A program made the position numbers and the translations under genes. A stretch of DNA of 64,000 bases from Selaginella moellendorffii (Eukaryota > Plantae > Lycopodiophyta), in NCBI RefSeq assembly GCF_000143415.4, contig NW_003314262.1, positions 1,477,960 to 1,541,959 of the forward strand. The letters are read 5' to 3'. This document shows, one piece after another, positions 30,427 through 45,531 of this stretch (position 1 is its first letter; each line of letters starts with the position of its first letter). The notes below the pieces were generated by a model. That model made no database searches. It was not told where the DNA came from and worked only from the letters and a program-made list of their open reading frames with translations.

Positions 30427-31036
30427 CTGTAGAGAAGTTAGGAAAACAGCAAGAAAGGGGTGATTTTTGGCCTACCTTGACTGGGCTTCTCGATTGAGTA
30501 TGAGTGTCGCGTTTCTTCTTTACACGCATTGCCACCATGATGATGTTTGTGTCCTCAGTGATTTAAACGCTGCTGCGATTGAGAAGCGAAGTCAATTTCG
30601 AGGCAGAAGGCAAAGGATGTTGACAGAGACCCCTGCTTCCTGATGAATTACCGCTGTAGCTGACAGCTCCGCTACAACAAAGACGAGCTAAGGCCAAGTA
30701 AGAAGCATAACAAACCTTCCCATGCTAAAGTAAAGTGTTTACCCACTGCAAGTCTGGATTGATGGTCCACCATTCCCATTCACGGACTGTCTCCTCCACT
30801 TTACCTTTAATAATAAAACCCGAAAAAAAAAAGCGAACCAGAGCTCGCAGAGTTGTGGCACATGTCCAGTACTTGGACTGCTGTAAAGCAATTGCTAGTT
30901 TGCAACTCGAAGCAATGCTTACTTTTGTTCTTCCCGCAAAACAGGAGAATTAATCTGTAAAGAATCTGTTAATCGGATAACTCCAAAGCATTGGAAATCG
31001 TTACCTGAACGTAGTACTACAGCCGCACGTACATTC

Positions 31037-33830
31037 TCAGGATTCCAGCTGACTCTCCTTTCGTTTCACCGTTTGATCCAGAATGTCTATTCTTCGACTT
31101 GAGAGTTCAATGTATTGCCCCAGCTTGTCTAATGCTTGCCTCATAGTTCGCATTTTACTCTCTGGAACCGCAAGCTTTGGGCTGTTCCGGCGCCCAGCAC
31201 TGTTAAGATCGACTTTCTTTTTGGCAACACGTTCAGCGCGCAAGGTAAGTGATTCCACTGCAGACTGTAGGATATCGACGTCCTGATTCATTTTTCTATC
31301 TGCGTCACAGAAACCGTAAGGGTCAGGCGAATATGTTTTCCGTATATATGTGTGGCATACCCAGAAGATCTTTGAACTCCCGCTCTGCGACTGTCAGAAC
31401 CTTCTGTTTTAAAGCTGGAAGCTTGTTGCATTCCCGAATTCGCTCCTGTAGCTGCACGTTCTTCTCAAATGCTCGCTGTATGCGAGTTACGAAGGAGTCC
31501 AAGTTACTTTGAGCTTGATCAAGCTCGCCAGTCACTTGACGCAGCTGCCTTTGCAGATCTTGAACAACGTGACCGAGGTACTTATGATGAGACTTGAGCT
31601 CGACGTGCACCTGTTTCGTCATATCATAACTAAAACCATGAAACATCAAACGTAGAAAAGCCATACCCTGTGTGCATACTCAATATATTTTTCGTGCAGC
31701 AGCTTGCCTTGATCGTGAAGGATGGAGCGACCTTCAACAGTATTCAAAGTAAGAGGTGTAGAAGCCGAAATCTGCACAGAATATAAGACATGCATCTCAA
31801 GGTGCGAATCAGTTGTACCAGAGGGATGTGTATATCTTTCGGTCCGAGCAGCAAATCACTGCTGATAAGCTTGAGCGAAGGTTGGTCGGAGTTTGTCGCT
31901 GGAATACTGGTGTCCTCGATAGCGACTGGAGGAAGAGGTCGATGCGGTTTCATGTGTACAACAGCACAGTTTCCCGAAGCTGTAAGAACCACCAGCCATG
32001 TATCGCCGGAAGACTGGAGAATTACAGTAGCACCGAGAAGAGGAACAGGAGCAGAGTTTCCTGTGGCCGATGTTTCGAGAACTGGAAACACAATAGGCGG
32101 TTCCCTGCTCTCACCAGAAAACGTATCTGAAAATGGTAGCCACTGAAGCTGGATGGTGTCGAGTCCCATCGCATGATGACAATATATCCGCTCGGGGACA
32201 AGAGGGTCCGAAAATATTCCCAAAGGACTGGCATTGTAAACCTCTGTGTCCAGTGCTAGATCAACCGACGCCAAATGCAAAAGGGGTGGATTCGGTCCTA
32301 TAAACTGCTCCTCTTCTTTTTCTTCCGTGTCCTCGTCAGCTGTTTGTGCGGCGTCATTTTTCTCTGCGCCCGGTTCCACGAGCATTGCCAAAGTTACCAA
32401 ATCGCCTAGATCGTCTTGGAGAAGTTTGGGGGTGTTGTCCAAGCTCCACATAGGATGGACTTCATCGGCAATCGCATAAAAGAACATCTCCCCGTTTTTT
32501 GTGCACACGGTAATGACGCTATCCTTCCCAGCGGTATTATACAGCATCCCAGTGGCATAGCTCGATATTTTGTGATCATTCTCACGTCCAGATAGTTTGG
32601 GAAGAGGCCCCTGCGCACAACATACTATAAGAACCGGGAAGTAAAGAAAAAATCAAGTGGCATACCTGCAGCACCAACGACGCATTGAAGGGAACCTGGG
32701 GACGAGCTCTAAACACTGACGAGGTTTCCAGCTCTTTTTCAGTATCACCAAGCTCCGGGAAGACAATCTCGAGCCAAACAGCTGCAAGCCTCGAGCTTTC
32801 CTTTGCCGTGGGAGAGTTGTTCGACACTTGGCCGGCCAGATCTTTAAGACTCGAACCATAATGAAGGCTGCAAAAAGCTTTTGTAAATCACTGACTTCAT
32901 ACTCTACGCATTTTTACCTTCCAAATGGCACTATGGGACAAAGAGCATAGATCGATGCATCCGTAAGAAGAACAAAAACCTTGTAAAAATTATTGATGAT
33001 AGAAGTTTCGTACCCTGAGGAAAAACCAACTTCTTACCGTAAACCGGTCCCAAAAGTGTTCACCGCCGAAAGCAAATGATACCGCGCGACAATATGGTTT
33101 GGAGCGAGCACCAATCTGCAAGTGGTACTCTTGTTCTGGCACCGTGATATCTCCAGCTAAGTTGTATAGTCTGGAAGGGAAACTCATTACCTCAAGCGCT
33201 GGCACTACTGACGAATTCATACCTGAAAACCCCGTCCGAGGATAGCACTCCAAGGTGCGTTTCACTGTAAGGATGCCAAGCGGCATGAAGTACTCGCAGA
33301 GACCGGCCATTAAACATATCCCCAGCGATCATTCCAGATCTGCCAAAAAGAAAGAAGAGTAATCAAGGAAAAACAACGCTGTGGATGATGACAAACTTAC
33401 CGGCATGGCTGTGAAGCTTGAGAGACCACATTCACGAACATAAGAGCTCTTTCACCAGCCAGTAACAGCAGCTCTCCCGTTCGATTCAGCTTGAGACTCC
33501 TCACAGCAAAGGAAACGTCTGTGCTGAGCTTCAAGGTCTATCTACATTCTCATCGATCAACAAGAACACCGAAGAAAATGGAGGAAATTTTGAGCTCACC
33601 TTGCTCTCACTCGCTGCATAGAGGGACTCCGACTGATCATCGAGGGTAGAATCCTCGATCTGGAGAGAATGGAGTAGCCGGTGCTCGAGATCCCACATGA
33701 AAATGCGACCAGCGCCATCGTACGCCAGGAGATTGAGGGGCATGAATGCCGCCTCAGCTGCTGCGAGCCCAGCAGGATCGATCGCCATCGACTTGAAAAT
33801 ACCGGCGCCTTCCAGCTTCACTCTCGCCAT
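31037..33830 (-). CDS. NUP88: Nucleoporin Nup88 (MOS7-like), multi-exon
   Basis: Beta-propeller region with WHAASSVHLGILT.., PEQEYHLQ, FAFGGEHFWDRFTV, PERIYCHH; C-terminal coiled coil (EKYIEYAHRVHVELK). Confidence 0.8.
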
Positions 33831-34023
33831 TTTGTGGAAGAACCCTAAACCCCGTGGGAGGGAAGAACTAGGGTTTGTAGAAAATGAGCGTGATCTCGCC
33901 ATACAGGGCCGGATTCCAGCTCGTTTGATGGAGTAGAATGCGGGTGCGTCGGAGATCGTTAATTTTCTTGGAAGAATCGGGCTCCAAGGGATCAAAATCT
34001 TCGCAATGGAGTAGAGATTTTGG

Positions 34024-37000
34024 ATGAAAAATGCGGGTGTGGAGATCTTTCGTTTTCTTGGAAGAATCGGGCACCAAAGGATCAAAATCCTCTTCGCTGG
34101 TCGCAATCTCTGCCATATCAAGTCGATACACATTTCACAGGTATAATCTCGCTGTTCTTCGCGTTTTCTTATCGATTTCTCTTGGTGCTCTTCCAGTGGT
34201 CTTCTGGAGAGCTTGCAAGCCGTAATGTGGCCCACGGGCGGTGTGATTCTTCTCGCGACGAGGTAAGAGCTTCTTTGCTGGCTGCTATCAAGGCATGCAC
34301 AGTGTCGAGAGACTTAGACAAGGGGAAAGTCTGTCACGCAGATGCTACAAAGACCGGGGAAGCCTCAAACTTCTTTGTGGCTAGCAGCCTTCTCAACATG
34401 TACGCCAAGTGTGGCAGCATGGAAGATGCTCGCAAAGTCTTCGACTCCATTCCTCGCCACAACGTCGTGACTTGGAACACTTTGATCCTCGGCTATGTGG
34501 AGATCGGTGAAGAACAAGTAGCTTTGGATGCTTTCCATCGCATGCAAGCTCAAGGGTGTGTTCCCGACGCGAGAAGCATTGTTTCTGCGATCAAGGCGTG
34601 CACTGGTCTTGCAGCCAAGGAATCGCCCAAGCAAGTAAGCTTTTTTCTTTTCTTCTTTCGCTTCTAGCTAACTTGGAAAATCAATAGATCGGAGAAAAGC
34701 TTGTGAAAATCGAGGCTTTGCAGAAGGGCCTGGCTATTCACGCTCAAGTTCGACGCAGCACTGGCTTACAAGACGTTTTTGTCGCGAGCACTCTCGTCAG
34801 TATGTATGCTAGATGTGGAAGCTTGGAAAACGCTCGGATGGCGTTTGAGAAGATGCCTTGTCACAACGTCGTTTCCTGGAACGCTATAATTCTTGGGACA
34901 GTGGACAACGGAGAAGCAGAGGCGGCAGTAGAGCTATTTGCGAGAATGCGGCAGACTGGAGCTCCACCGAATTTTCTTACGTTCGTCGCGGCCCTGAAAG
35001 GCTGTGCGAACCTGTCAGGGGACGAGACTCAAGTCAGTGGAAGGCCGTGTAAGCTCCGGGTTTTAGAGACGTGCATGGATCTCCACAGTGAAGCTGCGAA
35101 GTTTTGCTGCGACTCCAACATATTTGTCGCAAGCTCGCTGGTCCAGCTCTACGCAAAGTTGGGAAGCATGGTGGATGCTGGAAGGGTGTTTGAGAGAATG
35201 GCGTGCTGCGATGCCGCTACTTTCAATGCCTTGGTGCTGGGGTATGTCGAGAATGGAAAAGAGCAGCTTGCTCTCGACTTGTTTGCAAGGATGGAAGCTA
35301 TAGAGTCCGGGACCAACGCGCAGTCTTTCGTTGCGGCCTTGAAGGCTTGCGCTATTCAGGCAGCTATGGAGAAAGGAAGGAAACTAGATGGCAAACTCGT
35401 GAATAACGAGACTCTGAGAAAATGCGTCGACATCCACTCTCGAGCTGCCGAACGGGGATACGAGTCGCACATGTTCGTGGCCAGCAGCTTAGTGGATTTG
35501 TACGCGAAGTGTGGTGACGTCGCTGCAGCTCGCAAGGTTTTCGAGAAGATGGTTTGCAAAGACGTGGTTTTGTGGACGTCGATCATGCTGGGACATGCTG
35601 AAAATGGAGAAGGGGAACAGGCAATGGAGCTTTTCCAACGCATGAAGTCCGAAGGGTGTGCTCCAGATGCTCTGACGTTCGTGGCCGCACTCAAAGCTTG
35701 CATTGCTCTAGCATCGAGAGAGGAGTCCAAGGAAGTGGATGGAAGGCTTGTGAGGACCGAGTCACTGCAACTGGGAACCGAGATATACTTGCAAGCCGTC
35801 AAGAGCAACTTCCACACTGACATGCTCGTCTCAAACACCGCGATGGATTTTTATGCCAAGTGTGGGAGCATGCTGGATGCGAGAAGGGTGTTTGACGGCA
35901 TGGCTTCACGCAGCGTCGTCTCCTGGACAGTGATGATTCTCGGCTATGCTGAAAACGGGGAGGGAGAGCTAGCCTTGGAGTTTTTCGAGCGCATGAAAAC
36001 TCAAGGCTGCTCTCCAAACTCTCGGACGTTCGTTGCAGCATTTAAGGCCTGCTGCTGCCTAGCAGAAAAAGAAGAAGCCAAGCAAATCAACGGAAAGCTC
36101 GTGAAGGTGAAAACGCTGCAGAGAGGAACGGGGATTTACTCTCAGGCCGTCGAGAGCTGCGGTGACTCTACCAACATTTTTCTCGTCAACACGGTGTTGG
36201 ATATGTTCGTGAAGTGTGGAAGCATGGCAGACGCACGGCAGCATTTCGAGAAGATGGAAAACAGGGATGTGATATCCTGGACTGTGCTGCTGCTGGGATA
36301 CGCCGACACCGACGAGTTTGAGGTCGTGCTAGAGCTGTTTGCGGGGATGCGAGACGAAGGCATCACTCCAGATCCTCTCACTTACGTCGCTGCTTTCAAG
36401 GCCTGCGCTGGCCTGGCGTCGAAGGAAGAGCCGAAGCAAATGGATGGCATGCTCGCAAAGCTCGGATCACTAGACAAGGGGATGGCTGTCCATTCGCAAG
36501 CCGCTAGTGGAGGCGACGACACGAAGATCTTCGTGGGAAACACGCTGGTGGACATGTACGCAAAGTGCTGGAGTGTGCTCGACGCTCGTCGAGTGTTCGA
36601 CAAGATGGAGTCCCACACAACCGTCTCGTGGAACGCCTTAATCCAGGGATACGCCGACGGCGACCAAGGTGAGCTAGCTCTCGAGATCTTTTTCTGGATG
36701 CAAGCTAACGGGTTTGAGCAGGATCCCCGGACTTTGGCCGCGGCGCTCAAGGCCTGCGGTAGCGTCGTCGCCATGGACACCGGCAAAGCGATCCACGCTC
36801 GTCTCTCCCGTCACGGCCTGGAAGACGATCCAGTTCTCGAGACATGCCTGGTCGACTTCTACGGTAAATGCGGCTGCATGGTTCATTCCCGGCATGTCTT
36901 TGACAAGCAAACTCGCAGGGACTCGGTGGCTTTCGCGGCGCTGATCTCGGGATACAGCCGACAGGGAGACATGGAAGACGCTGCTGGAATGTTTCGGCAA

Positions 37001-37399
37001 TTGCGGCACGAAGAACTGAAGCCCGAGGCCGTGACTTTCGTGTCGCTGCTCACTGGATTCAGCCACGCCGGCCTGGCCGATCGAGCAAAGAGCTACTTCC
37101 ACGCGATGGAGCCGAGGTATGGAGTTCCTCCAGGCATCGAGCACTACGTTTGCATGGTCGATATCCTTGGCAGGAACAACGAGCTCGAATCAGCAGTGGC
37201 GATGGTGGAGTCGTCCAAGCTCTTGGAAGAATCGCCATCGAATTCTTCCGTGGCCTGGACGGCGATTCTCAGCGCTTGTCACAAGTGGAAGAATGTGAAG
37301 ATCGCGAGGCTGGCCTTCCAAAACCTCCAAAGGCTGGACGCGGCGTACGGACCGGCGTACGTCCTCATGGCCAACATCTATGGCGGAACCGACGACTAG
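34024..37399 (+). CDS. Long PLS-class PPR protein (exons about 34024-34140, 34197-34634, 34688-37399) ending in a truncated E region, no DYW
   Basis: Repeated FVASSLVDLYAKCG / VVSWxxxILGYAENG / FVAALKAC triplets; two GT-AG introns join ORFs in frame; start codon inferred. Confidence 0.88.
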
Positions 37400-37736
37400 G
37401 ATTTAATAGAGTAAATAGCGGGGCCTTTAGAAGATTCGAACCTCCACTTTCCCGGCTATTATTTAAAGGAACCAGTTAAAAAACAAAGCTAAAGGTAGGG
37501 CTCGGGGGCCCCTCCCCTTTTACTTGTCGCGCTTAAAGACCACACGAGGGCGTCTTCGTCTGGCTGGTGCCTGCTCAGCGCCATGGCGGCCATGGATTGA
37601 TCGAATACGCGCTGTTGCCTCCGATCGCTATCGATTCTCGCCTCCCCGCCGTCGCTATCGATCGGTCTAGCAAGTGCGCGGCGAGTGGAGCAGTGTGGGA
37701 ACAGGGTTTAGGGCAGGGAAATCTCGCTCTCCAGCT

Positions 37737-39060
37737 ATGGCGAGCAATCTCTCCTTCTGGGAGCTAGATCCTTTCTTTCCAGCTGCGGAGGAGGTGCAAA
37801 ACTCGACCGACAGGTAAGATTTCTTGCTTTGGAGCTCCAAAGAGTGATTGGATTCATGGGAATGAGCATTCTTGCAGGATGGAATCGATTTATCGTGCTT
37901 GGAAATACACCCAGGGCGTTGCGCAGGAGACTCCGGAAGATTCTTCGATCATTGCGGCGGTGAAAGCGAACAAGCGCGACCTTATCACTGCTCTCGACAC
38001 GGTCAGATGGCAAGTAAGTCGATTCAACCTTCTTCCCTTTTAGTCTTTCTCCTTTTCCTGGAACTTACTTTCCAGAACTTTAGAGCGTCTTTTTTCTCTG
38101 TCAGTTATTAAGTTTCGTTTCTTTCCAGTTGGAAGAATTCGCGAGGGCAGTGAAAGTCGCAACGAATGCTGCCGCCGAGCGTGTCTACCTGGGCGAGGAT
38201 GCGAAATCTCGTCACACCCAGTTCGTGAACGCGATCCAAAGCCAGGTGTGTAATATGGAGAAAGAGATAGGCGATTCCTTAGAGAAGAAGAAGCTCAAGT
38301 ACGCGAGCATTGGTGAGGCGGACAGCAAGTGCCTCGCACTGTTCCTATCGGGTAGTGACGACGTAGATAGTAGCTCTCCGACCGCCATAGCCGTCCAAGA
38401 ACGCGAGGTAGAACAGGGCAACGACAACGACGTTTTGCTCGACAGCCTTCCAAGTATTTCTATCAGAATCGACACTGTGGACGGTTGCAATGGGTTTTGT
38501 CATCACAACGAACGAAATGGTTTTTTCTCGAGTGGCAGTAGCAGCAGCAGTAGCAGTGGCAGTTCTAGTAGCAGTCGGGATGGATTGATAGAATCCAAGA
38601 GTTTTTGGAACAGCGTAGCGGGGATTCTTTTCTGGAGAGCTCGAGACCATCAATCGAAGATGCAAATGTCGGCCAGTGTGTTGAAGCGGTGGAAAGACGG
38701 CGACGCTGGCTTTCTAGATCGCGCCGAGGAGTGCATGTCAGCATTGAAGAATCGATGCCTGGTACGTAAAGAATGAGATTGCTTTCTCGCTTTTGTTTTC
38801 TCCAATGACTTTGGTGTTTACAGGGTAGAAACAATGGCAGGAAGCAGTCAAGCGGTTCCCCTCGTTTGTTTGGTCTCCTCGGTGATCACAGCGGAGCGGT
38901 GATCCAGAGAAGGTTTCTGCGAGCGAGCGAGGTTGGGGACGCTGCGAAGATCGGATTTGGAGCGCTCGTGGTGATTGGGCTCATGGGTTTGTACTTTTGG
39001 TTCTTGTCGACTCTCGTGCCGCTGGATCATCAGCCTGTCCCCGGCAGCTTCTTGAATTGA
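37737..39060 (+). CDS. Syntaxin-6 N-terminal-domain (t-SNARE family-like) protein with C-terminal TM helix; 4 exons
   Basis: WELDPFFPAAEEVQNSTDR|MESIYRAW, RDLITALDTVRWQ|LEEFARAV, RHTQFVNAIQSQV; hydrophobic C-terminus. Confidence 0.85.
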
Positions 39061-41736
39061 TTGATCAAAACTCGAAATGGGGTTTTAATAAATTTAAAAA
39101 TTATCTGTCTAGATTTTATAAGGAGAATATTTTATGTTTATGCTTTTTAAGTAAGTATATTTAGTATAAGTACATACACCTTTTCTAAAAGGCAAAAGTG
39201 TTGCGAATCAAAAGACAGTGTGTTTTACAGATTTTATTTTATTTTTGTTTCTCGAATAAGCAAGTTTCATGCGTCCTAATCTGTTGTACGATTGCTACCG
39301 CCGTACGGCTGCCATCTATGGATGAGCATTGCAAGCGAAATGAACTTGCTCTGGAAACTCTGATGGCAGACCCACTGTGACAGCAAACCCAATGCTCCCA
39401 AACCCTCTTCACGCTCGCCCTTTCAAACACTGTGCTCCATGTAGCAAGAGAGCTTCCTCGGGCTCAAGCTCCAGATTCTTGAGAGCTTCATTGCGTGGAT
39501 TCAACTTGCAAAGCTCGTGGATGGCACCCTCCAAGGCCTGGCGGCCACTGATCCTTGCAGCTTCATTCAAATCATCGTCGGCTTCGCGAGACAACGCTAG
39601 AACCATGCCGTGAGCAAGCTGGCTGATCCACATCCACCGCCATTGATCCCGATGCCTCGGTGGCCAGCTCCACAAGCATAGCTATTTCATGCCTGAAGTT
39701 GGGATCGCCACTCACCAGTTGCCGCTCCAAGCAGTGATTCAACGCGGCCTCCAGGAAGAAAATGCTCTTCAACACCAGCAACTCCGCTTCGCATCCAAGC
39801 CCCGCCAGAATGGACGCGACCTCCATCCCCACTAAGCCCTATCCCTCCCCTTATGAATAGTTCATTCAGCATCACAAGTAAGTGGAGCCATCACCCATCA
39901 GGAAAACCACAAGTGGAGAGAACTTTTGCCATACCTGACTGAGAACATCAACATTGTTCCTGCCTCTCATAAGTTTGATTGCCTCGTCTAGTCTCACGAG
40001 AAATTTCAATCATTCTTTTGTGAGATTAGTTTTTTTCTTTGGCTTCATGAGTTTCTTGTAGCCTCTTGCTCCATGCTTTAGGCTTTTCTTCCAGAGCGTC
40101 TTCTTTCTATTCAATGCGCACACCATGATCGCCCAAGGAGAGGTCTTGCGGGGATGGAAGACCTCCAACGCACACATGCACACATGACGAGAAACTCTAC
40201 CTCAGCAACACAAAAATCCTCAACGTTTACACAACGACGCAGCTCTACATTGTTAATGGCGTAGAACGGTGGCTAAACACAGGATAGGTAGCATGCCGGA
40301 CGTGAAATGGTGTGAGCACCAGCACGTCGTGAATTAACATTGATTGAGTCGCATGCCCGTCCTGCCCAATTTTGCACCTCAGGACCGCGGTTCCAGACAC
40401 GAGAAGAAGACATGCCACCATTCCAAGAAAGCTGTGGGTGGATAAACCAGTCACTGGACCACAGTGCTGCGCACCTGATTCGTGTCCTTAACCATGTCTG
40501 CCCAAGCCCAGCACAAGCCCGATTCCCTAAGTCGAAATGATGGGATGCCAAATGCTGCCGAATGCTCGGATGCGCTCGCAATCAAGCACAGGGAAAACCA
40601 TTACCGGGATTTTCAAAAGTGGGATTTTTCAAAAATCCGAATTTGTGGCATTGAGCTTCAAGATAGAGGTTGCGGGAACTGGCAGTGCTGGCATTGTGAA
40701 GATTTTAATGTCTAGAGGAGCTCTTTAGGTAGTTTCTAAAGGACTAAGCTTGTGCTGAAACTGAACGACGAGCATATGCTTTTACATTCGGTAAATCGCA
40801 GCGCATCGCTTGGCTATGATGCTGAGCAGTCTTGGATGGAGGCGCAGAGTGATCTTGGAGAGATCTTGGAGGCAGGATGAGCTTGGAGTAGATTTTCTTT
40901 GCGGAGGATGTCCAGCTCAATGATCCGGGATCTTCGCACCTCCAAGATCGCTCACCAGAGAAGTGCTCTAAATCTATGGATGACTCAACCAGTACCCTTG
41001 TTGTTCATGGAACAATCGAGGCAGCACCTGTAATACCTCGAAACTCTATCGTCCAGATCAGTCTATTCCAAGTACGCTGGATTCTCATCACTCCTGCTCT
41101 CTTGACTGATTCGCCAGTAAAGTTCTTGGAAGCTGATCGTCTGCTCAAGAAGTGGTAAAGTAAGTATGACAATCTCTCTAGTTTTCTCAAACTTCCACTG
41201 CTTCTTACGATCTTCCATGGTGTTTTGGTGACAAGCCCTAGAGTCGGAATGATGCACTTGCTTTGAGCGAAACAAAGTGTTGTCAATTGGGTTATCCTTC
41301 TCTTTTAATTATGAGCAACACACACCTTTGACAGTCGAGCGTCAGGTAACGTTCTTGCTGTTTCCATCTTAACTACAAACTTAGCAAACACTGTTCTTGA
41401 ACAGGAACGCAACAAGTCCACTGGCTTGGACGTCCCCATGACTGGAATAGGTGGTTGACGCAAAGGTATTGAAGGTTGAAGGGCTGTTCCCATGCATCCA
41501 AAAAGCCACCCACTGGAGATCCATAAGCAGCCGCCGTTCAGTGTGAGTTGTCCAGGGGTATGAAGGTTTACTTCTTGTTTTGTTGTTTCTCTACTTATCT
41601 CGTTTGCTTGCTTGTTTCAGGTGGCATGATGTCAAACACTAGACTTTTGAAGCATAGGAAATGGGCTCTCGTTGTGCTCAGCCATGATTGGTAAGTTTTT
41701 CTTCTCCCAGAAACTTGTCTTGTTGCTTTCTCATTC

Positions 41737-42140
41737 TTATGTTTCTTTGATCAGTGAAGGAACATGGTGATGATCCAGAGGCATAAGAGTCAACAAGAAC
41801 CAAAAGTACAAACCCATGAGCCCAATCACCACAAGCGCTCCAACTACAATATTCGCAGTGTCGCTGGGTTGGTACGCTTGCAGAAATCTTCTCTGGATCA
41901 CCACTCCGCTGACCAAACAAACGCGGGAAACCATTGGGTTGCCTCCTGCCATTGTTTCTACCCTGTGAACCCCAAGTTATACAATCATTCTTACGTACTA
42001 GGCATCAATTCTTCAATGCTGATATGTCTAGAGAAAGCCAGTGTCGTCTTTCCACCGCTTCAACACTCTTGCATCCCCAGTTGATGGTCTCAAGCGCTCC
42101 AGAAAGAATCCCCGCTACGCTGTTCCAACTTTTGGAACTC
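41737..42140 (-). pseudogene. Inverted, intron-retaining copy of the 3' end of the Syntaxin-6_N gene
   Basis: VIQRRFLQA..ALVVIGLMGLYFWFL.TL.PLDH matches 38866-39060; upstream part matches 38595-38830 including the intron. Confidence 0.85.
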
Positions 42141-42266
42141 GAGGCACGAAAAGAGAATATTCGTTAAAGCCCGTTATGCTTCTTATGGTCACCAAAAATT
42201 CTTAAGAAGGATTCTATGTTTGAATTTTTTATGCACGACACCAAACATTAGATGCTTACATTCTGC

Positions 42267-42273
42267 TATAAAA
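42267..42273 (+). promoter_or_regulatory. Probable TATA box of the Hog-domain gene
   Basis: TATAAAA about 70 nt upstream of ATG 42341; AATAAA at 43603-43608 follows the stop. Confidence 0.5.
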
Positions 42274-42340
42274 TGGCGTGCTCTAGAGTGTTAGTAACCA
42301 GCAGTTTCGAGCTAGATAGATATATCATAATTCTGTTCTA

Positions 42341-43588
42341 ATGGCTCATACCAATGCTCTAATCTTCCTGACTTCCTTCATTGCCTTCGCTGCAAGCATT
42401 GCAGGGGCAGGAATTTCACTTCCTCCCACGCCACCCCTTGCCTCCCCTCCCACTCTAGCCACTCCTCCAAGCACTACTCGCACTCCCCCTCCAGGCACTA
42501 CACCCCCTCCAGGCACTACTCCGCCTCCAGGCACTCCGCCTCCAGGCACTCCCCCTCCAGGCACTACACCCCCTCCAGGCACTCCCCCTCCAGGCACTAC
42601 ACCACCTCCAGGCACTCCCCCTCCAGGCACTACACCACCTCCAGGCACTCCCCCTCCAGGCACTACACCCCCTCCAGGCACTACACCTCCTCCAGGCACT
42701 CCTCCAGGCACTACACCCCCTCCAGGCACTCGACCCCCTCCAGGCACTCCTCCACCCCCTCCAGCAACTCCAGCCACTCCAGCCAGTCCAGGATGTTTCC
42801 CAGGTATGGTTCATGTGAATTCATGTTGTTTTCTTCATACAATGTTCAAGCTATTATAGGAGATGCAACTGTTCAGATGTATAATGGAGAAATTAAGTTC
42901 GTGAGGGAGCTTAATGTTGGAGACAAGGTTGAATACTTTCACACAAATCTTGTCCAAGTATAACTTTTCCACAGGTTGCAGTGGGCAAGAATATCTATTC
43001 AGATGTATATGGATTCGGCCACAAGGATGCTGATGCCATCTCCAAGTTTTTCCAAGTGCACAGCGCTTCAAACATGTTGGAACTCACTGCAGGCCACTTT
43101 GTTCCCGTTGCTGTCAATGGGAAGCTCATGTACAAGAGAGCCGAGGACCTCAAGGTTGGAGATTCCCTGTGGGAATCATCTAAAATCACTGGTAAGGAAA
43201 GCAAAAAGCATATATATTGGTGGGATGTTTCTAACAATTCTGCGCTACTTCTCCAGAAATCTCAAAGGTTGAGAAGCTAGGCCTCTACAACCCACTCACT
43301 CTCTCTGGCAGTATCATGGTGAACAATGTTCTAGCATCCACTCACAGCGAGTGGTTCTTGGACTCCATCTTTGATGCTGTCGGTGCAACCGAGTACCTGC
43401 CATACGCATACCAGGCCGTGCTTGCTCCAGTTCGCGCCATCTACAACACCATTGGCAAAGACCTCTATGCAAAGGGCTATGCTGCCATCGATTCCTTCAC
43501 CAGCATTGCTGAGTTTGGAACGAAGTATGGAGGAAGCGTTGCTCTCACTTTTGGAATTGCTGGTCTTGTGCTAGCCTCCAAGGTGTAA
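42341..43588 (+). CDS. Secreted Pro/Thr-rich protein fused to a Hedgehog-type Hint/Hog autoprocessing domain; exons 42341-42803, 42860-42927, 42975-43191, 43257-43588 (359 aa)
   Basis: Spliced frame has no stops: signal peptide, (PPGTTP)n, G-CFPGDATV..LNVGDKV, YSDVYGFGH, LTAGH, AEDLKVGD, GLYNPLTLSGSIMVNNVLAS, SRR-like YQAVLAPVRAIY. Confidence 0.9.
42478..42760 (+). repeat. 15/18-bp coding tandem repeat (CCTCCAGGCACT core) encoding PPGTP/PPGTTP
   Basis: Direct reading. Confidence 0.95.
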
Positions 43589-43634
43589 ACACTTTCAGCA
43601 CGAATAAAAATTCTATATAGACAGTGCAATTATT

Positions 43635-43671
43635 GGGGCATTCCGAGAATAGAACTCGGGACCTCTTGCAC
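43635..43671 (-). pseudogene. 3' half of tRNA-Pro (fragment)
   Basis: Reverse complement GTGCAAGAGGTCCCGAGTTCTATTCTCGGAATGCCCC resembles the plant cytosolic tRNA-Pro 3' half; 5' half absent. Confidence 0.7.
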
Positions 43672-45531
43672 TGGTTACTAACATAACTAAAACACTAAGT
43701 CTTGCTTGTTTATTTAAATATTATTTAATATAATATATTTCTCTATTATGATTTGTCTAATATGTTAATGCTATTGTATCTTTGATCTATAGTTTTCTTC
43801 TATTGTCTTGAGTAATTTTACTTCTTCATTGTGCTTTTAGTATTATAGTTTTTATATGTATATTTATCATTTGTATTGTTAAGTTCTAATAACAAAACTT
43901 AATTTATTTAATTAAGATACTTTTTAACTTTATAAATAAGTGATTATAAATATAATTTAAACACAAAATCTCAAGGTAAATGTGATGAAAGTGTCTGCTG
44001 TATAATGAAGGTGTTTTTCCACAGATACAGTTGTTTGTGTGACAAATCATGAGAAACCAGCATGGATACATCAAGTAGGATCTGCAGGAGTAAAGTTGGA
44101 AGCAGCTTGATTGCTTCGGTGCATCCTCATGCAGTGCACGAATGAGCCTCGGGATTGTGATAAAAGTTGCAATCCCATTTGTGACGTAGAAACTTGAACA
44201 GTGACTAGACTTTGCTGATGAGTTAAGCTTCTTCGAATGTCTTCACCACCTTTCCTAGCAGTATGGGGAAGAAAGACTGAATCTTGATCCAAAGCAAAGG
44301 AGAGAAAGATCCCTCCATCTCATGAGAGGAGCCTCATTCCAGTGAAGATCCTCATGAAAGCAGATAGGCACTGCATCATCTTGATTCATGTCCTCCTGAA
44401 TCTGGATCTCATTTTTAACACACCAAAAGAACTTAGAACTGTTGGTTAAGATTTTCAACCTGTTTTCACATGTGATTCACTTCCACCCAGAGAAACAACA
44501 AATCATCTGGATTGCCATGGTGAGAATATAGTCTCATGAAACTTATTGTTCATTGCTTATGCACAAGCAGAAACATCTCCTCAAGGTCATTGCTCCCAGA
44601 CTTGACTCAATCACTTGAATTTGATCAATGTGTTCCACAATCTTTGTGCACAAGTGGTGGTAAGAATCAACATAAATCTACACAAGCTAAATTCCATGCA
44701 CTTTTTATTTAATTATTTTTGTTATTCTTGTTTGTTCTTGTTTTTATTTAACATCTTTGTGTACTTTAATCTTTGTGATCCTGTTCGTGACACAGTTTTA
44801 GCAGCTTTTGCAAGCCATAAGTTGTAAATACATTTGATTCCCAACACACTATATAGATTGAAAGACAAAAGTGACCAACCAAGGAGCCTATTATACTGGC
44901 ACCAAACCTAATATTTAGACTAAGGCCAAATTTATGTGTTTAAAAAAAGGGGTGATTGCATGATAGAATATAACAAAGTGATAATAAAATAATTTGCTGT
45001 GCATTATGCAGTAATGTTTGGTTTGTTTAATAATAGCATACTGGATCTTGATCTTCGGTCATTATAGTGGCCTTCCAACTGATACTCAAGCCTCAGGTAC
45101 CTGTTTATGGTCAACATCATCTCAGGATTATCTGCCTGGATTTTCTCTCAACAGACTTCTAGAGCTTAGGCACTTGAAGGTGGTATAAAAATGTTATAAT
45201 TTATAAAAAAGATTAATCTTATTGCATATCAGTAATATAATCTAGAATATACTAGGAAGTAATAAAGTTTATAAATTATAAATACAAGATTAATCTAAAT
45301 GAATAACAACTGTTAGATAGTAAAATATCCAAAAATATCGAAGTATATTTTAGGTATATTCACTACCACCCTGAAAAAGTAGTTGAAACAACATAAAAAA
45401 TAAACCTAAAATCATTTTATATAAATATTTTAAAAACATTTATTAGTTTTCTTATATTTATAATATTTTTAGAATATACTAGCTATTTTTCTAAAAATAG
45501 TTATATTTTGTGAGTGCATGAAATATGGAAA

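What the first reader, a model, noticed from the sequence alone, without database searches (positions are those of the whole stretch)
42341..43588. Plant cell-wall-type Pro-rich peptide fused to a Hedgehog autoprocessing (Hog) domain: candidate sterol-anchoring system
Seen: four exons, split across the ORF track, splice into an intact 359-aa protein. It has a signal peptide, about 125 aa of PPGTTP repeats (HRGP-like), then Gly151-Cys152 (GCFPG), Hint block-B LTAGH, the C-terminal GLYNPLTLSGSIMVNNVLAS motif, an SRR-like YQAVLAPVRAIY helix (compare Hedgehog AHxAFAPxRL) and a hydrophobic tail. TATA and AATAAA flank it. Established: in Hedgehog this module cleaves at G|C and ligates cholesterol to the N-terminal fragment. 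Hog proteins are not known from angiosperms but have been noted in scattered non-animal eukaryotes, so the domain itself may already be catalogued for this lineage. Inference: the product is a hydroxyproline-rich glycopeptide esterified at its C-terminus to a phytosterol or another nucleophile, a GPI-independent way to tether or cross-link wall proteins.
Basis: partly seen in the sequence, partly recalled or inferred. Interest (0 to 1): 0.9.

Follow-up and report, generated by a model that had tools for sequence, protein, structure and literature searches.

The report
Selaginella Hog gene with proline-rich cargo
This is a real, expressed gene of the spikemoss Selaginella for a secreted protein that joins a proline/threonine-rich wall-protein-like peptide to a Hedgehog-type self-cleaving domain; the family has been catalogued in this plant since 2008, and whether it attaches a sterol has not been tested.

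Summary
Four GT..AG exons (42341-42803, 42860-42927, 42975-43191, 43257-43588) splice into an intact 359-aa protein. RNA contigs from three runs show all three junctions.

The protein has four parts:
- a signal peptide;
- a 128-aa Pro/Thr/Gly repeat (81% P+A+S+T);
- a Hint/Hog module starting at Gly151|Cys152;
- a C-terminal hydrophobic anchor.

Pfam Hint matches the exon pieces colinearly. An AlphaFold model of the 99%-identical allele finds the Drosophila Hedgehog autoprocessing domain as best PDB match. It also aligns with animal Hedgehogs through their sterol-recognition helices.

The gene is not new. The window is an allele of a Selaginella moellendorffii locus that RefSeq names "warthog protein 4" (301 aa, fewer repeats). 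Bürglin (2008) already reported Hog domains in Selaginella and Physcomitrella. Relatives occur in a moss, a liverwort, another lycophyte, a fern and a green alga.

The catalytic set departs from animal Hedgehog. His replaces the general base Asp46 in 43 of 43 relatives. Thr replaces Cys143, and that position is variable across the family.

Self-cleavage that releases the Pro-rich peptide is well supported by inference. Sterol esterification is plausible but untested, and cross-linking of wall proteins has no support. This scan also holds notes on two other Hog genes in this genome and one on this same stretch.

The parts
42267..42273 (+). TATAAAA box, about 50 nt upstream of the first base covered by RNA contigs (42322)
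   Evidence: position; contigs start at 42322
42341..42409 (+). Start codon and signal peptide (aa 1-23, hydrophobic core LIFLTSFIAFAASIAGA)
   Evidence: Kyte-Doolittle 19-mer up to 2.1. The cleavage site is inferred, not predicted with a dedicated tool.
42410..42793 (+). Pro/Thr/Gly-rich low-complexity cargo (aa 24-151): 49% P, 25% T, 14% G; 15 TPPP; ends in Gly151
   Evidence: No Pfam family. Repeat number differs from the reference allele.
42794..42796 (+). Cys152 codon (Hint Cys1), the predicted nucleophile of the N-to-S acyl shift; invariant in 43/43 relatives
42804..42859 (+). Intron 1 (GT..AG, phase 1)
   Evidence: joint seen in X1, X5 and X6
42860..42927 (+). Exon 2, Hint N-terminal strands
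   Evidence: Pfam Hint profile positions 17-38
42928..42974 (+). Intron 2 (GT..AG, phase 0)
   Evidence: joint seen in X1 and X6
42975..43191 (+). Exon 3, Hint core. His193 (43020-43022) lies at the position of Hedgehog Asp46; Thr215 (43086-43088) and His218 (43095-43097) form the TxxH block B.
   Evidence: Pfam Hint 46-92; alignment to 6TYY/1AT0; family counts
43192..43256 (+). Intron 3 (GT..AG, phase 1)
   Evidence: joint seen in X1, X5 and X6
43257..43360 (+). Exon 4, first part: last Hint strands (GLYNPLTLSGSIMVNNVLAS). Thr278 (43340-43342) lies at the Hedgehog Cys143 position and is followed by the nearly invariant HS-x-W.
   Evidence: Pfam Hint 132-163, 30.4 bits; alignment to SHH 7E2I
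43361..43501 (+). Helical post-Hint region (aa 285-331), SRR/ARR-like, with nearly invariant D, YQ, P and R
   Evidence: AF2 helices 146-192 of the model, which align with the C-terminal SRR part of animal Hedgehog models; conservation
43529..43588 (+). C-terminal hydrophobic tail (GGSVALTFGIAGLVLASKV) and stop codon: a membrane anchor (transmembrane, or possibly a GPI signal)
   Evidence: hydropathy, and 30/43 relatives have such a segment, usually followed by K/R
43603..43608 (+). AATAAA hexamer in the 3' UTR; RNA contigs continue to about 43741

Best explanation
The region is an expressed allele of a Selaginella moellendorffii Hog gene that RefSeq names 'warthog protein 4'. It encodes a secretory-pathway precursor made of a signal peptide, a 128-aa Thr/Pro/Gly-rich cargo, a Hedgehog-type Hint module, a conserved helical adduct-recognition (SRR-like) region and a C-terminal membrane anchor.

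Proposed mechanism, inferred from Hedgehog and intein chemistry:
1. In the ER lumen, Cys152 attacks the Gly151 carbonyl in an N-to-S acyl shift, helped by Thr215 and His218 of the TxxH block.
2. The resulting thioester is resolved by a hydroxyl nucleophile. That nucleophile is activated by His193, which occupies the place of Hedgehog's general base Asp46.
3. This cuts the probably hydroxylated and O-glycosylated Pro-rich peptide free from the membrane-anchored Hog domain.

The nucleophile is not established. A membrane sterol is the best single candidate, water is about equally likely, and the two are weighed as rivals below.

Shown here: the gene model, its transcription, the Hint fold and motifs, and family-wide conservation of the catalytic positions. 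Inferred: cleavage, glycosylation and any adduct.
For: - Gene model and splice junctions.
- Pfam Hint PF01079 matches the exon 2, 3 and 4 pieces colinearly (14.3, 19.8 and 30.4 bits). Paralog P0001, 93% identical over the Hog part, scores 94.3 bits, E 1.1e-26.
- The 99%-identical reference allele P0152 and about 20 other Selaginella gene models (two haplotypes, so fewer loci) carry precomputed PF01079.
- The AF2 model has pLDDT 88.9 and pTM 0.83. Its best PDB matches are Drosophila Hh-C, 6TYY and 1AT0 (E 5.7e-11 and 1.2e-10, TM by target 0.79-0.80).
- The best 30 Swiss-Prot models are all Hedgehog or warthog proteins. Many of these alignments run over model residues about 10-192, so they include the post-Hint helices.
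- In 43 full-length relatives: Cys1 43/43, His at the Asp46 position 43/43, Thr/Ser69 43/43, His72 43/43. The post-Hint motif is nearly invariant.
- The Drosophila D46H (D303H) mutant keeps its structure and cholesterolysis activity and accepts more sterols (PMC9163320).
- Exons 2-4 differ at 2 of 609 nt from the reference allele, against about 2.3% mismatches in the surrounding alignment. dN/dS against paralog P0151 is about 0.36.
- A C-terminal hydrophobic anchor is present in 30/43 relatives.
Against: - No biochemical evidence exists for any plant Hog (paper searches).
- Cys143, required for processing of animal Hedgehog and forming a branched thioester (PMC12054796), is Thr here. In relatives it is A, S, T, V or C, so the animal mechanism cannot apply unchanged.
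- The Pfam Hint profile stops matching at position about 163 of 213. The SRR part is therefore not recognised by sequence, only by comparison of predicted structures.
- Sister paralogs carry cargos of only 6-7 residues (P0153-P0155). This raises the question whether the N-terminal product is the functional part at all.
- The full spliced protein could not be submitted as one query, so the whole-domain tests rest on a 99%-identical allele.
Confidence: 0.8

Rival explanations
1. Sterol ligase reading: the thioester is resolved by the 3-OH of a membrane phytosterol. The product would be a Hyp-rich glycopeptide esterified to a sterol at Gly151. It would be anchored in the outer membrane leaflet, functionally like the GPI anchor of classical arabinogalactan proteins.
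For: - His is invariant at the general-base position, and D46H Hedgehog still transfers sterols, with wider tolerance.
- The post-Hint helices are strongly conserved and superpose on the Hedgehog SRR in predicted models.
- The C-terminal anchor holds the domain at a sterol-containing membrane.
- Bürglin 2008 found motifs J and K in moss and Selaginella Hogs.
Against: - No adduct data exist for any non-animal Hog.
- Cys143 is missing.
- The SRR is not recognised by the Pfam profile.
- For nematode Hogs, the literature renamed the region 'adduct recognition region' precisely because sterol use is unproven.
Confidence: 0.3
2. Release-only reading: the Hog module is a self-cleaving membrane tether. 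The thioester is hydrolysed by water that His193 activates. The free Pro-rich glycopeptide, or in the paralogs a tiny peptide, is secreted into the wall, while Hog-C stays in the membrane or is degraded.
For: - Thioester hydrolysis is the default side reaction of Hint domains.
- The cargo is a fast-evolving, length-polymorphic repeat (359, 301 and 281 aa forms). It is reduced to 6-7 residues in paralogs, which suggests little constraint on what is released.
- Cys143 is absent.
Against: The post-Hint helical region is not needed for thioester formation in Hedgehog, yet it is among the most conserved parts of the family. That is hard to explain if no adduct is recognised.
Confidence: 0.35
3. Other-nucleophile reading: the acyl group is transferred to a non-sterol acceptor, such as a wall polysaccharide hydroxyl, a glycolipid or sphingolipid, or a protein amine. 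The peptide would then be covalently tethered to the wall or the membrane.
For: - The conserved adduct-recognition region differs in sequence from the animal SRR.
- Cargos in relatives include carbohydrate-binding modules, such as hevein/chitin-binding in P0021 and B-lectin in P0050. This hints at an extracellular-matrix context.
Against: Purely speculative: no Hint-family precedent was found here for transfer to a polysaccharide. The membrane anchor points to a membrane acceptor.
Confidence: 0.1
4. Inactive relic: the Hint domain no longer processes, and the protein acts as an uncleaved membrane protein with a Pro-rich ectodomain.
For: Asp46 and Cys143 of animal Hedgehog are both replaced.
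Against: - Cys1, His at the 46 position, Thr/Ser69 and His72 are invariant across 43 relatives, from a green alga to a fern.
- The gene is expressed and its coding exons are conserved between alleles.
Confidence: 0.05

Closest known systems
Plant Hog proteins of Bürglin 2008 (pSm, pSl and pPp Hog; PMC2362128) and the RefSeq/UniProt entries for this locus (XP_024531827.1 'warthog protein 4 isoform X1'; EFJ27964.1 / D8RJU0 'Hint domain-containing protein')
   Same: Same species and the same locus as L001 on GL377581.1. The Hog part is 99% identical (206 of 208 residues). It has a signal peptide, motifs J and K, and a replacement of the Cys in motif J, as that paper describes.
   Different: This allele has about 58 more residues of Pro/Thr/Gly repeat (359 against 301 aa). 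In what I read of the 2008 paper, it notes a conserved upstream region shared by its moss and Selaginella sequences and no Pro-rich cargo. The older GenBank model (427 aa) wrongly fuses an upstream ORF.
Animal Hedgehog C-terminal autoprocessing domain (HhC; PDB 1AT0, 6TYY)
   Same: Gly|Cys-Phe cleavage site, Hint fold (TM 0.8), the TxxH block, the 'VLAS' last strand and a helical region after Hint. The protein is a secreted precursor.
   Different: His replaces the general base Asp46, as in the engineered D46H mutant. Thr replaces Cys143. A C-terminal membrane anchor is added. The cargo is a low-complexity repeat, not a Hedge signalling domain. Sterol transfer is not shown.
Hoglet (choanoflagellate) and nematode T-hog / Short-hog proteins
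   Same: A Hog domain fused to a low-complexity, probably O-glycosylated N-terminal stretch (poly-Thr) or to very short N-terminal peptides. Bürglin attributes the repeats to replication slippage.
   Different: The repeat here is Pro-rich with TPPPG units of the plant HRGP composition type. The lineage and the catalytic residues differ.
Classical arabinogalactan proteins and other hydroxyproline-rich glycoproteins
   Same: A signal peptide, a domain with more than 50% P+A+S+T (81% here), and a C-terminal module that is removed and, in AGPs, replaced by a lipid (GPI) anchor.
   Different: There is no AP dipeptide and only two SP. There is no SPPPP extensin motif and no Tyr cross-link motif. The C-terminal module is a Hog domain, not a GPI signal. 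Hydroxylation and glycosylation are untested.
Inteins and bacterial intein-like (BIL) domains
   Same: The Hint fold (Foldseek E 1e-7 to 1e-4) and N-terminal Cys thioester chemistry.
   Different: There is no C-extein and no terminal Asn, and the similarity is weaker than to Hedgehog. The domain sits at the C-terminus of a secreted precursor.

Membership tests
Hog (Hedgehog-type Hint + SRR/ARR) autoprocessing proteins | Match to the Hint module profile (Pfam PF01079) | tested here: met
   Exon pieces hit colinearly at profile positions 17-38, 46-92 and 132-163 (14.3, 19.8 and 30.4 bits). Paralog P0001 scores 94.3 bits against a cut-off of 29.7. Allele P0152 carries precomputed PF01079.
Hog (Hedgehog-type Hint + SRR/ARR) autoprocessing proteins | Hint beta-fold closest to Hedgehog rather than to inteins | tested here: met
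   AF2 model of P0152:82-301, pLDDT 88.9. Foldseek against PDB: 6TYY and 1AT0 rank first (E 5.7e-11 and 1.2e-10), and inteins and BIL follow at 3.6e-7 or weaker.
Hog (Hedgehog-type Hint + SRR/ARR) autoprocessing proteins | Small residue followed by Cys at the cargo/Hint boundary (G|CF) | tested here: met
   Gly151-Cys152-Phe-Pro-Gly. Cys and Phe are invariant, and the -1 residue is G or S in 35/43 relatives.
Hog (Hedgehog-type Hint + SRR/ARR) autoprocessing proteins | Block B TxxH | tested here: met
   LTAGH aligns to T69 and H72 of 6TYY. T/S is 43/43 and H is 43/43.
Hog (Hedgehog-type Hint + SRR/ARR) autoprocessing proteins | General base Asp46 (Asp303 in Drosophila Hh) | tested here: not met
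   His193 occupies this position and is invariant in 43/43 relatives. The engineered D46H Hedgehog is active, so the function may be kept with a different residue.
Hog (Hedgehog-type Hint + SRR/ARR) autoprocessing proteins | Second catalytic Cys (Cys143, motif J) | tested here: not met
   Thr278 aligns to the Cys of SHH 'VLASC'. The position is A/S/T/V/C in relatives. This agrees with Bürglin 2008 for moss and red-algal Hogs.
Hog (Hedgehog-type Hint + SRR/ARR) autoprocessing proteins | Sterol/adduct recognition region after Hint | tested here: inconclusive
   Four conserved helices follow Hint and align with the C-terminal part of Hedgehog models (query residues to 192). However, both structures are predictions, and the Pfam profile does not match beyond position about 163.
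Hog (Hedgehog-type Hint + SRR/ARR) autoprocessing proteins | Autoproteolysis with transfer of cholesterol or another sterol to the N-terminal fragment | not testable with these tools
   Needs biochemistry. No published test on any plant Hog was found.
Hydroxyproline-rich glycoproteins (AGP / extensin / PRP) | Signal peptide plus a domain biased to P, A, S and T (50% or more) | tested here: met
   Hydrophobic N-terminus. The mature cargo is 81% PAST and 49% Pro.
Hydroxyproline-rich glycoproteins (AGP / extensin / PRP) | Class-defining motifs (SPPPP for extensins, clustered AP/SP/TP for AGPs, Tyr cross-link motifs) | tested here: not met
   SPPP 0, AP 0, SP 2, Tyr 0, Lys 0. Instead there are 15 TPPP and 16 PPG. 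No Pfam family matches exon 1. The cargo is HRGP-like in composition only.
Hydroxyproline-rich glycoproteins (AGP / extensin / PRP) | Prolyl hydroxylation and O-glycosylation | not testable with these tools
   Needs protein chemistry.

The most novel reading that the evidence does not exclude
Seed-free land plants use a Hedgehog-type Hog domain with a natural His general base to esterify a phytosterol onto the C-terminus of a hydroxyproline-rich glycopeptide. This would be a sterol-anchored, AGP-like surface molecule in which the Hog domain takes the role of a GPI signal. It would be the first protein sterylation outside animals.
Probability: 0.25. Interest if true: 0.85.

Novelty: new member of a known kind. 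Interest (0 to 1): 0.45.

Why it matters
Covalent sterol modification of proteins is known only for animal Hedgehog. Whether the widespread non-animal Hog domains do the same chemistry has been open since they were catalogued in 2008.

This locus gives a compact, expressed and easily cloned test case of about 210 aa of Hog. It carries a natural version of the engineered D46H general-base swap and lacks Cys143. A simple in vitro cleavage and sterol assay would therefore answer two questions at once: what plant Hogs do, and which catalytic residues are dispensable.

If a sterol or other lipid is attached, this would add a new kind of membrane anchor for plant wall glycoproteins. If not, the gene is an ordinary member of an already catalogued family.

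Tried and rejected
- **Whole protein as one query.** I therefore searched the exon pieces and used the 99%-identical allele P0152 for whole-domain tests.
- **Exact-protein look-up.** P0152 and P0001 are not on record. The older models P0165 and P0151 worked.
- **First homolog search.** I repeated it with the repeat-free paralog P0153. No seed-plant protein appeared, but this is not a proof of absence.
- **Original D46H paper.** PMC7106946 is not held. I used the review PMC9163320 instead.
- **Phytosterol data.** The 2026 SHhC paper has no mention of sitosterol, phytosterol, plant or ergosterol.
- **Second Hog copy in the window.** tblastn found none.
- **tRNA-like stretch in the 3' UTR.** ARAGORN found no tRNA and Rfam gave nothing meaningful.
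- **Collagen-like reading of the PPG units.** Rejected, because Gly recurs every 5-6 residues, not every 3.
- **Extensin reading.** Rejected, because there is no SPPPP and no Tyr.
- **Pseudogene reading.** Rejected on expression, the intact ORF and the conserved catalytic positions.
Full report
**1. The observation**

Reading 41900-44100 and splicing the four proposed exons gives canonical borders: CAG|GTATGG...TTATAG|GA, AAG|GTTGAA...CACAG|GT and CTG|GTAAGG...TCCAG|AA. The exons are 42341-42803, 42860-42927, 42975-43191 and 43257-43588. Together they give an uninterrupted 1080-nt reading frame of 359 residues plus stop (my first attempt mis-set two borders).

- a hydrophobic N-terminus;
- Pro/Thr/Gly repeats;
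- Gly151-Cys152 in GCFPG;
- LTAGH;
- GLYNPLTLSGSIMVNNVLAS;
- YQAVLAPVRAIY;
- the tail GGSVALTFGIAGLVLASKV.

Tandem Repeats Finder sees the array at 42480-42750 with periods 18 and 33. TATAAAA lies at 42267 and AATAAA at 43603.

**2. Transcription**

Public RNA runs hold about half of the sampled words of 42250-43650, as expected for a spliced mRNA. I laid contigs of X1, X5 and X6 on 42100-43800.
- All three joints appear as GT..AG skips: 42803|42860 in three runs, 42927|42975 in two runs and 43191|43257 in three runs.
- Coverage runs from about 42322 to about 43741.
- Raw reads of X21 gave one read only, so expression in that sample is low.

The same contig sets carry two further forms.
- One has GGATGCTTCCC at the end of exon 1, which is the sequence of the reference allele.
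- One has AAATACA after the third joint, which encodes the E-I-Q-K of paralog P0001.
- So both alleles and a paralog appear to be transcribed. The contigs show presence only.

The transcript extends at least 133 nt beyond the AATAAA, so that hexamer is not shown to be the poly(A) signal.

**3. What the protein is**

The spliced protein has no reference, so I searched the exon pieces.
- Pfam Hint (PF01079) matches them colinearly. Exon 2 hits profile positions 17-38, exon 3 hits 46-92 and exon 4 hits 132-163. Exon 4 alone is above the gathering score.
- phmmer against PDB aligns exon 3 to Drosophila Hh-C (6TYY, 1AT0) and exon 4 to human SHH.
- An exhaustive phmmer of the exon-4 piece against 1.84 billion representatives gave 462 proteins at E<=1e-3 and 101 at E<=1e-10.

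Named relatives show the organism. The nearest proteins are Selaginella moellendorffii entries that NCBI names 'warthog protein 4', 'warthog protein 6' or 'indian hedgehog B protein', and UniProt names 'Hint domain-containing protein'.
- P0152 (XP_024531827.1, 301 aa) is 206/208 identical over the Hog part. It differs mainly by about 58 fewer repeat residues.
- The older model of that locus, EFJ27964.1, begins with the translation of the window's ORF 41764-42084.
- Its genomic locus (L001, GL377581.1:2366962-2389413) is collinear with window 30840-52765.
- Exons 2-4 differ at 2 of 609 nt. The surrounding alignment shows about 2.3% mismatches plus indels.
- The window is therefore the other haplotype, or another accession, of an already annotated gene.
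- A paralog, P0151, lies about 70 kb away on the same scaffold, with dN/dS of about 0.36 based on few changes.

**4. Fold**

I modelled P0152:82-301 on a 43-sequence alignment (A1). The model has pLDDT 88.9 and pTM 0.83. It shows:
- a beta-rich Hint module;
- four helices (model residues 146-192);
- a lower-confidence terminal helix.

Foldseek against PDB ranks the Drosophila Hedgehog autoprocessing domain first: 6TYY at E 5.7e-11 and 1AT0 at E 1.2e-10, with TM by target 0.79-0.80. Inteins, BIL and Vint domains follow.

Against Swiss-Prot AlphaFold models, the top 30 are all Hedgehog or C. elegans warthog proteins. Many of these alignments run from model residue about 10 to 192 and reach within a few residues of the Hedgehog C-terminus. 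They therefore cover the sterol-recognition region. Both sides are predictions, so I treat this as suggestive only.

**5. Catalytic anatomy**

From the alignments and the column counts:

| Hedgehog position | This protein | 43 relatives |
|---|---|---|
| Cys1 | Cys152 | Cys 43/43 |
| Asp46 | His193 | His 43/43 |
| Thr69 | Thr215 | Thr 27, Ser 16 |
| His72 | His218 | His 43/43 |
| Cys143 | Thr278 | A 14, S 8, T 7, V 7, C 7 |

- After the Cys143 position comes a nearly invariant H-S-x-W-x-x-D, and further on Y-Q-x4-P-x-R.
- The engineered D46H (D303H) Drosophila domain keeps its structure and cholesterolysis activity, and accepts more sterols (PMC9163320).
- Cys143 is required in animal Hedgehog and forms a branched thioester (PMC12054796).
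- The plant family thus keeps step 1 and a general base, but cannot use a Cys143 intermediate.
- Bürglin 2008 already noted that moss and red-algal Hogs have motifs J and K, with the motif-J Cys replaced (PMC2362128).
- An earlier scan note on this same stretch (s1-353661) made the His/Cys point. My alignments agree with it.

**6. The C-terminal tail**

The last 19 residues are hydrophobic (mean Kyte-Doolittle 1.5). Of the 43 relatives, 30 have a hydrophobic 15-mer in the last 60 residues, usually followed by Lys/Arg. This looks like a single-pass anchor with a very short cytoplasmic tail. A GPI signal cannot be excluded for the Selaginella forms, which end in SKV or SKA. Animal Hedgehog has no such anchor.

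**7. The cargo**

After the signal peptide, the 128-residue cargo is 49% Pro, 25% Thr and 14% Gly, or 81% P+A+S+T.
- It has 15 TPPP and 16 PPG.
- It has no SPPP and no AP.
- It has no Tyr, Lys or Cys, and no N-glycosylation sequon.
- No Pfam family matches it.

It is HRGP-like in composition, and contiguous Pro would be expected to be hydroxylated and arabinosylated (established plant knowledge, not tested here). It is neither a canonical extensin nor a canonical AGP, and it has nothing to cross-link with.

The cargo is also unstable. The allele has 58 fewer residues, RefSeq isoform X2 has 281 aa, and paralogs P0001 and P0151 have 279-281 aa. Other Selaginella paralogs have cargos of 6-7 residues (P0153-P0155) or a small Cys-rich module (P0157, P0004).

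Outside Selaginella the cargos differ:
- Hogs of a moss, a liverwort, a fern and another lycophyte carry a shared N-terminal domain of about 230 aa.
- Unnamed sequences from sequencing-run and metagenome assemblies carry hevein (P0021) or B-lectin (P0050) modules.

Poly-Thr cargos (Hoglet, T-hog) and very short cargos (Short-hog) are precedents in Bürglin 2008.

**8. Distribution**

Named relatives come from the following:
- Selaginella and Diphasiastrum (lycophytes);
- Ceratodon (moss);
- Marchantia paleacea (liverwort);
- Adiantum (fern);
- Raphidocelis (chlorophyte).

No seed-plant protein appeared in the searches. These searches were not designed to prove absence.

**9. Mechanism and rivals**

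Best supported is a secretory precursor that self-cleaves at Gly151|Cys152 through a thioester. His193 activates the resolving nucleophile, and the Pro-rich glycopeptide is released from a membrane-anchored Hog-C (confidence 0.8 for cleavage).

The nucleophile is open:
- a sterol, about 0.3;
- water, about 0.35;
- another acceptor, about 0.1;
- no processing at all, about 0.05.

The strong conservation of the post-Hint helices and of the His favours adduct transfer. The missing Cys143, the profile's failure to see an SRR and the tiny cargos of paralogs counsel caution.

**10. Novelty and verdict**

The gene, its Hint domain and the presence of Hog proteins in Selaginella are already in RefSeq, UniProt and the 2008 paper. 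I found no paper that tests the chemistry of a plant Hog or that discusses the Pro-rich cargo.

I therefore file it as a new member (an allele with a longer repeat, and an undiscussed cargo type) of a known kind. Interest is moderate, carried by the testable but unproven sterylation hypothesis.

The scan holds notes on two other Hog genes in this genome (s1-337333, s1-361231). They fit the multi-gene family seen.

Noticed in passing
window 42480-42750 vs L001 (GL377581.1): The Pro/Thr/Gly repeat differs in length between the window allele (359 aa) and the reference allele (301 aa). RefSeq also lists a 281-aa isoform X2. Contigs of runs X5 and X6 show a 3-nt insertion at 42698.
   Followed up: partly
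window 42773-42858 and 43191-43264 (joints with letters between): RNA contigs of the same runs carry the reference-allele spelling (GGATGCTTCCC) and the paralog P0001 spelling (AAATACA, encoding E-I-Q-K). Both alleles and a paralog therefore seem to be expressed.
   Followed up: partly
window 41764-42084: The old GenBank model EFJ27964.1 (427 aa) fuses the translation of this upstream ORF to the Hog gene and drops the true signal peptide. It is a mis-modelled 5' end. The RNA contigs start only at about 42322.
   Followed up: partly
window 43634-43690, minus strand: The 3' UTR holds a stretch that reads like the T-arm and acceptor 3' strand of a tRNA. The reference allele has CCGAG-TTCGATT-CTCGG. 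It may be a SINE or tRNA-derived fragment. ARAGORN and Rfam found no gene.
   Followed up: partly
P0153, P0154, P0155, P0157, P0004 (Selaginella paralogs): Sister Hog genes have mature cargos of only 6-7 residues (for example ATNTTG before the Cys) or a small Cys-rich module. Several of them lie together on one 459-kb scaffold.
   Followed up: no
P0021, P0050, P0005 (relatives): Hog domains fused to a hevein/chitin-binding module (P0021), a B-lectin (P0050) or Cys-rich repeats (P0005, from the moss Ceratodon). P0021 and P0050 are unnamed sequences from sequencing-run and metagenome assemblies. These are carbohydrate-binding cargos on the same autoprocessing module.
   Followed up: no
P0010, P0011, P0012, P0016, P0018, P0024: Hogs of a moss, a liverwort, a fern and Diphasiastrum share a conserved N-terminal domain of about 230 aa with no Pfam match. 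It is probably the 'conserved upstream region' of Bürglin 2008.
   Followed up: no
P0163, P0164 (Selaginella): Degenerate gene models with scrambled Hog fragments fused to unrelated sequence. They are probably pseudogenes or mis-annotations of further family copies.
   Followed up: no
window 30840-39317: This stretch is 97.8% identical to the reference scaffold and holds the neighbours annotated there as Nup88 and a PPR protein. Identity drops to 87-91% with indels closer to the Hog gene and downstream, where repeats and LTR elements lie.
   Followed up: no
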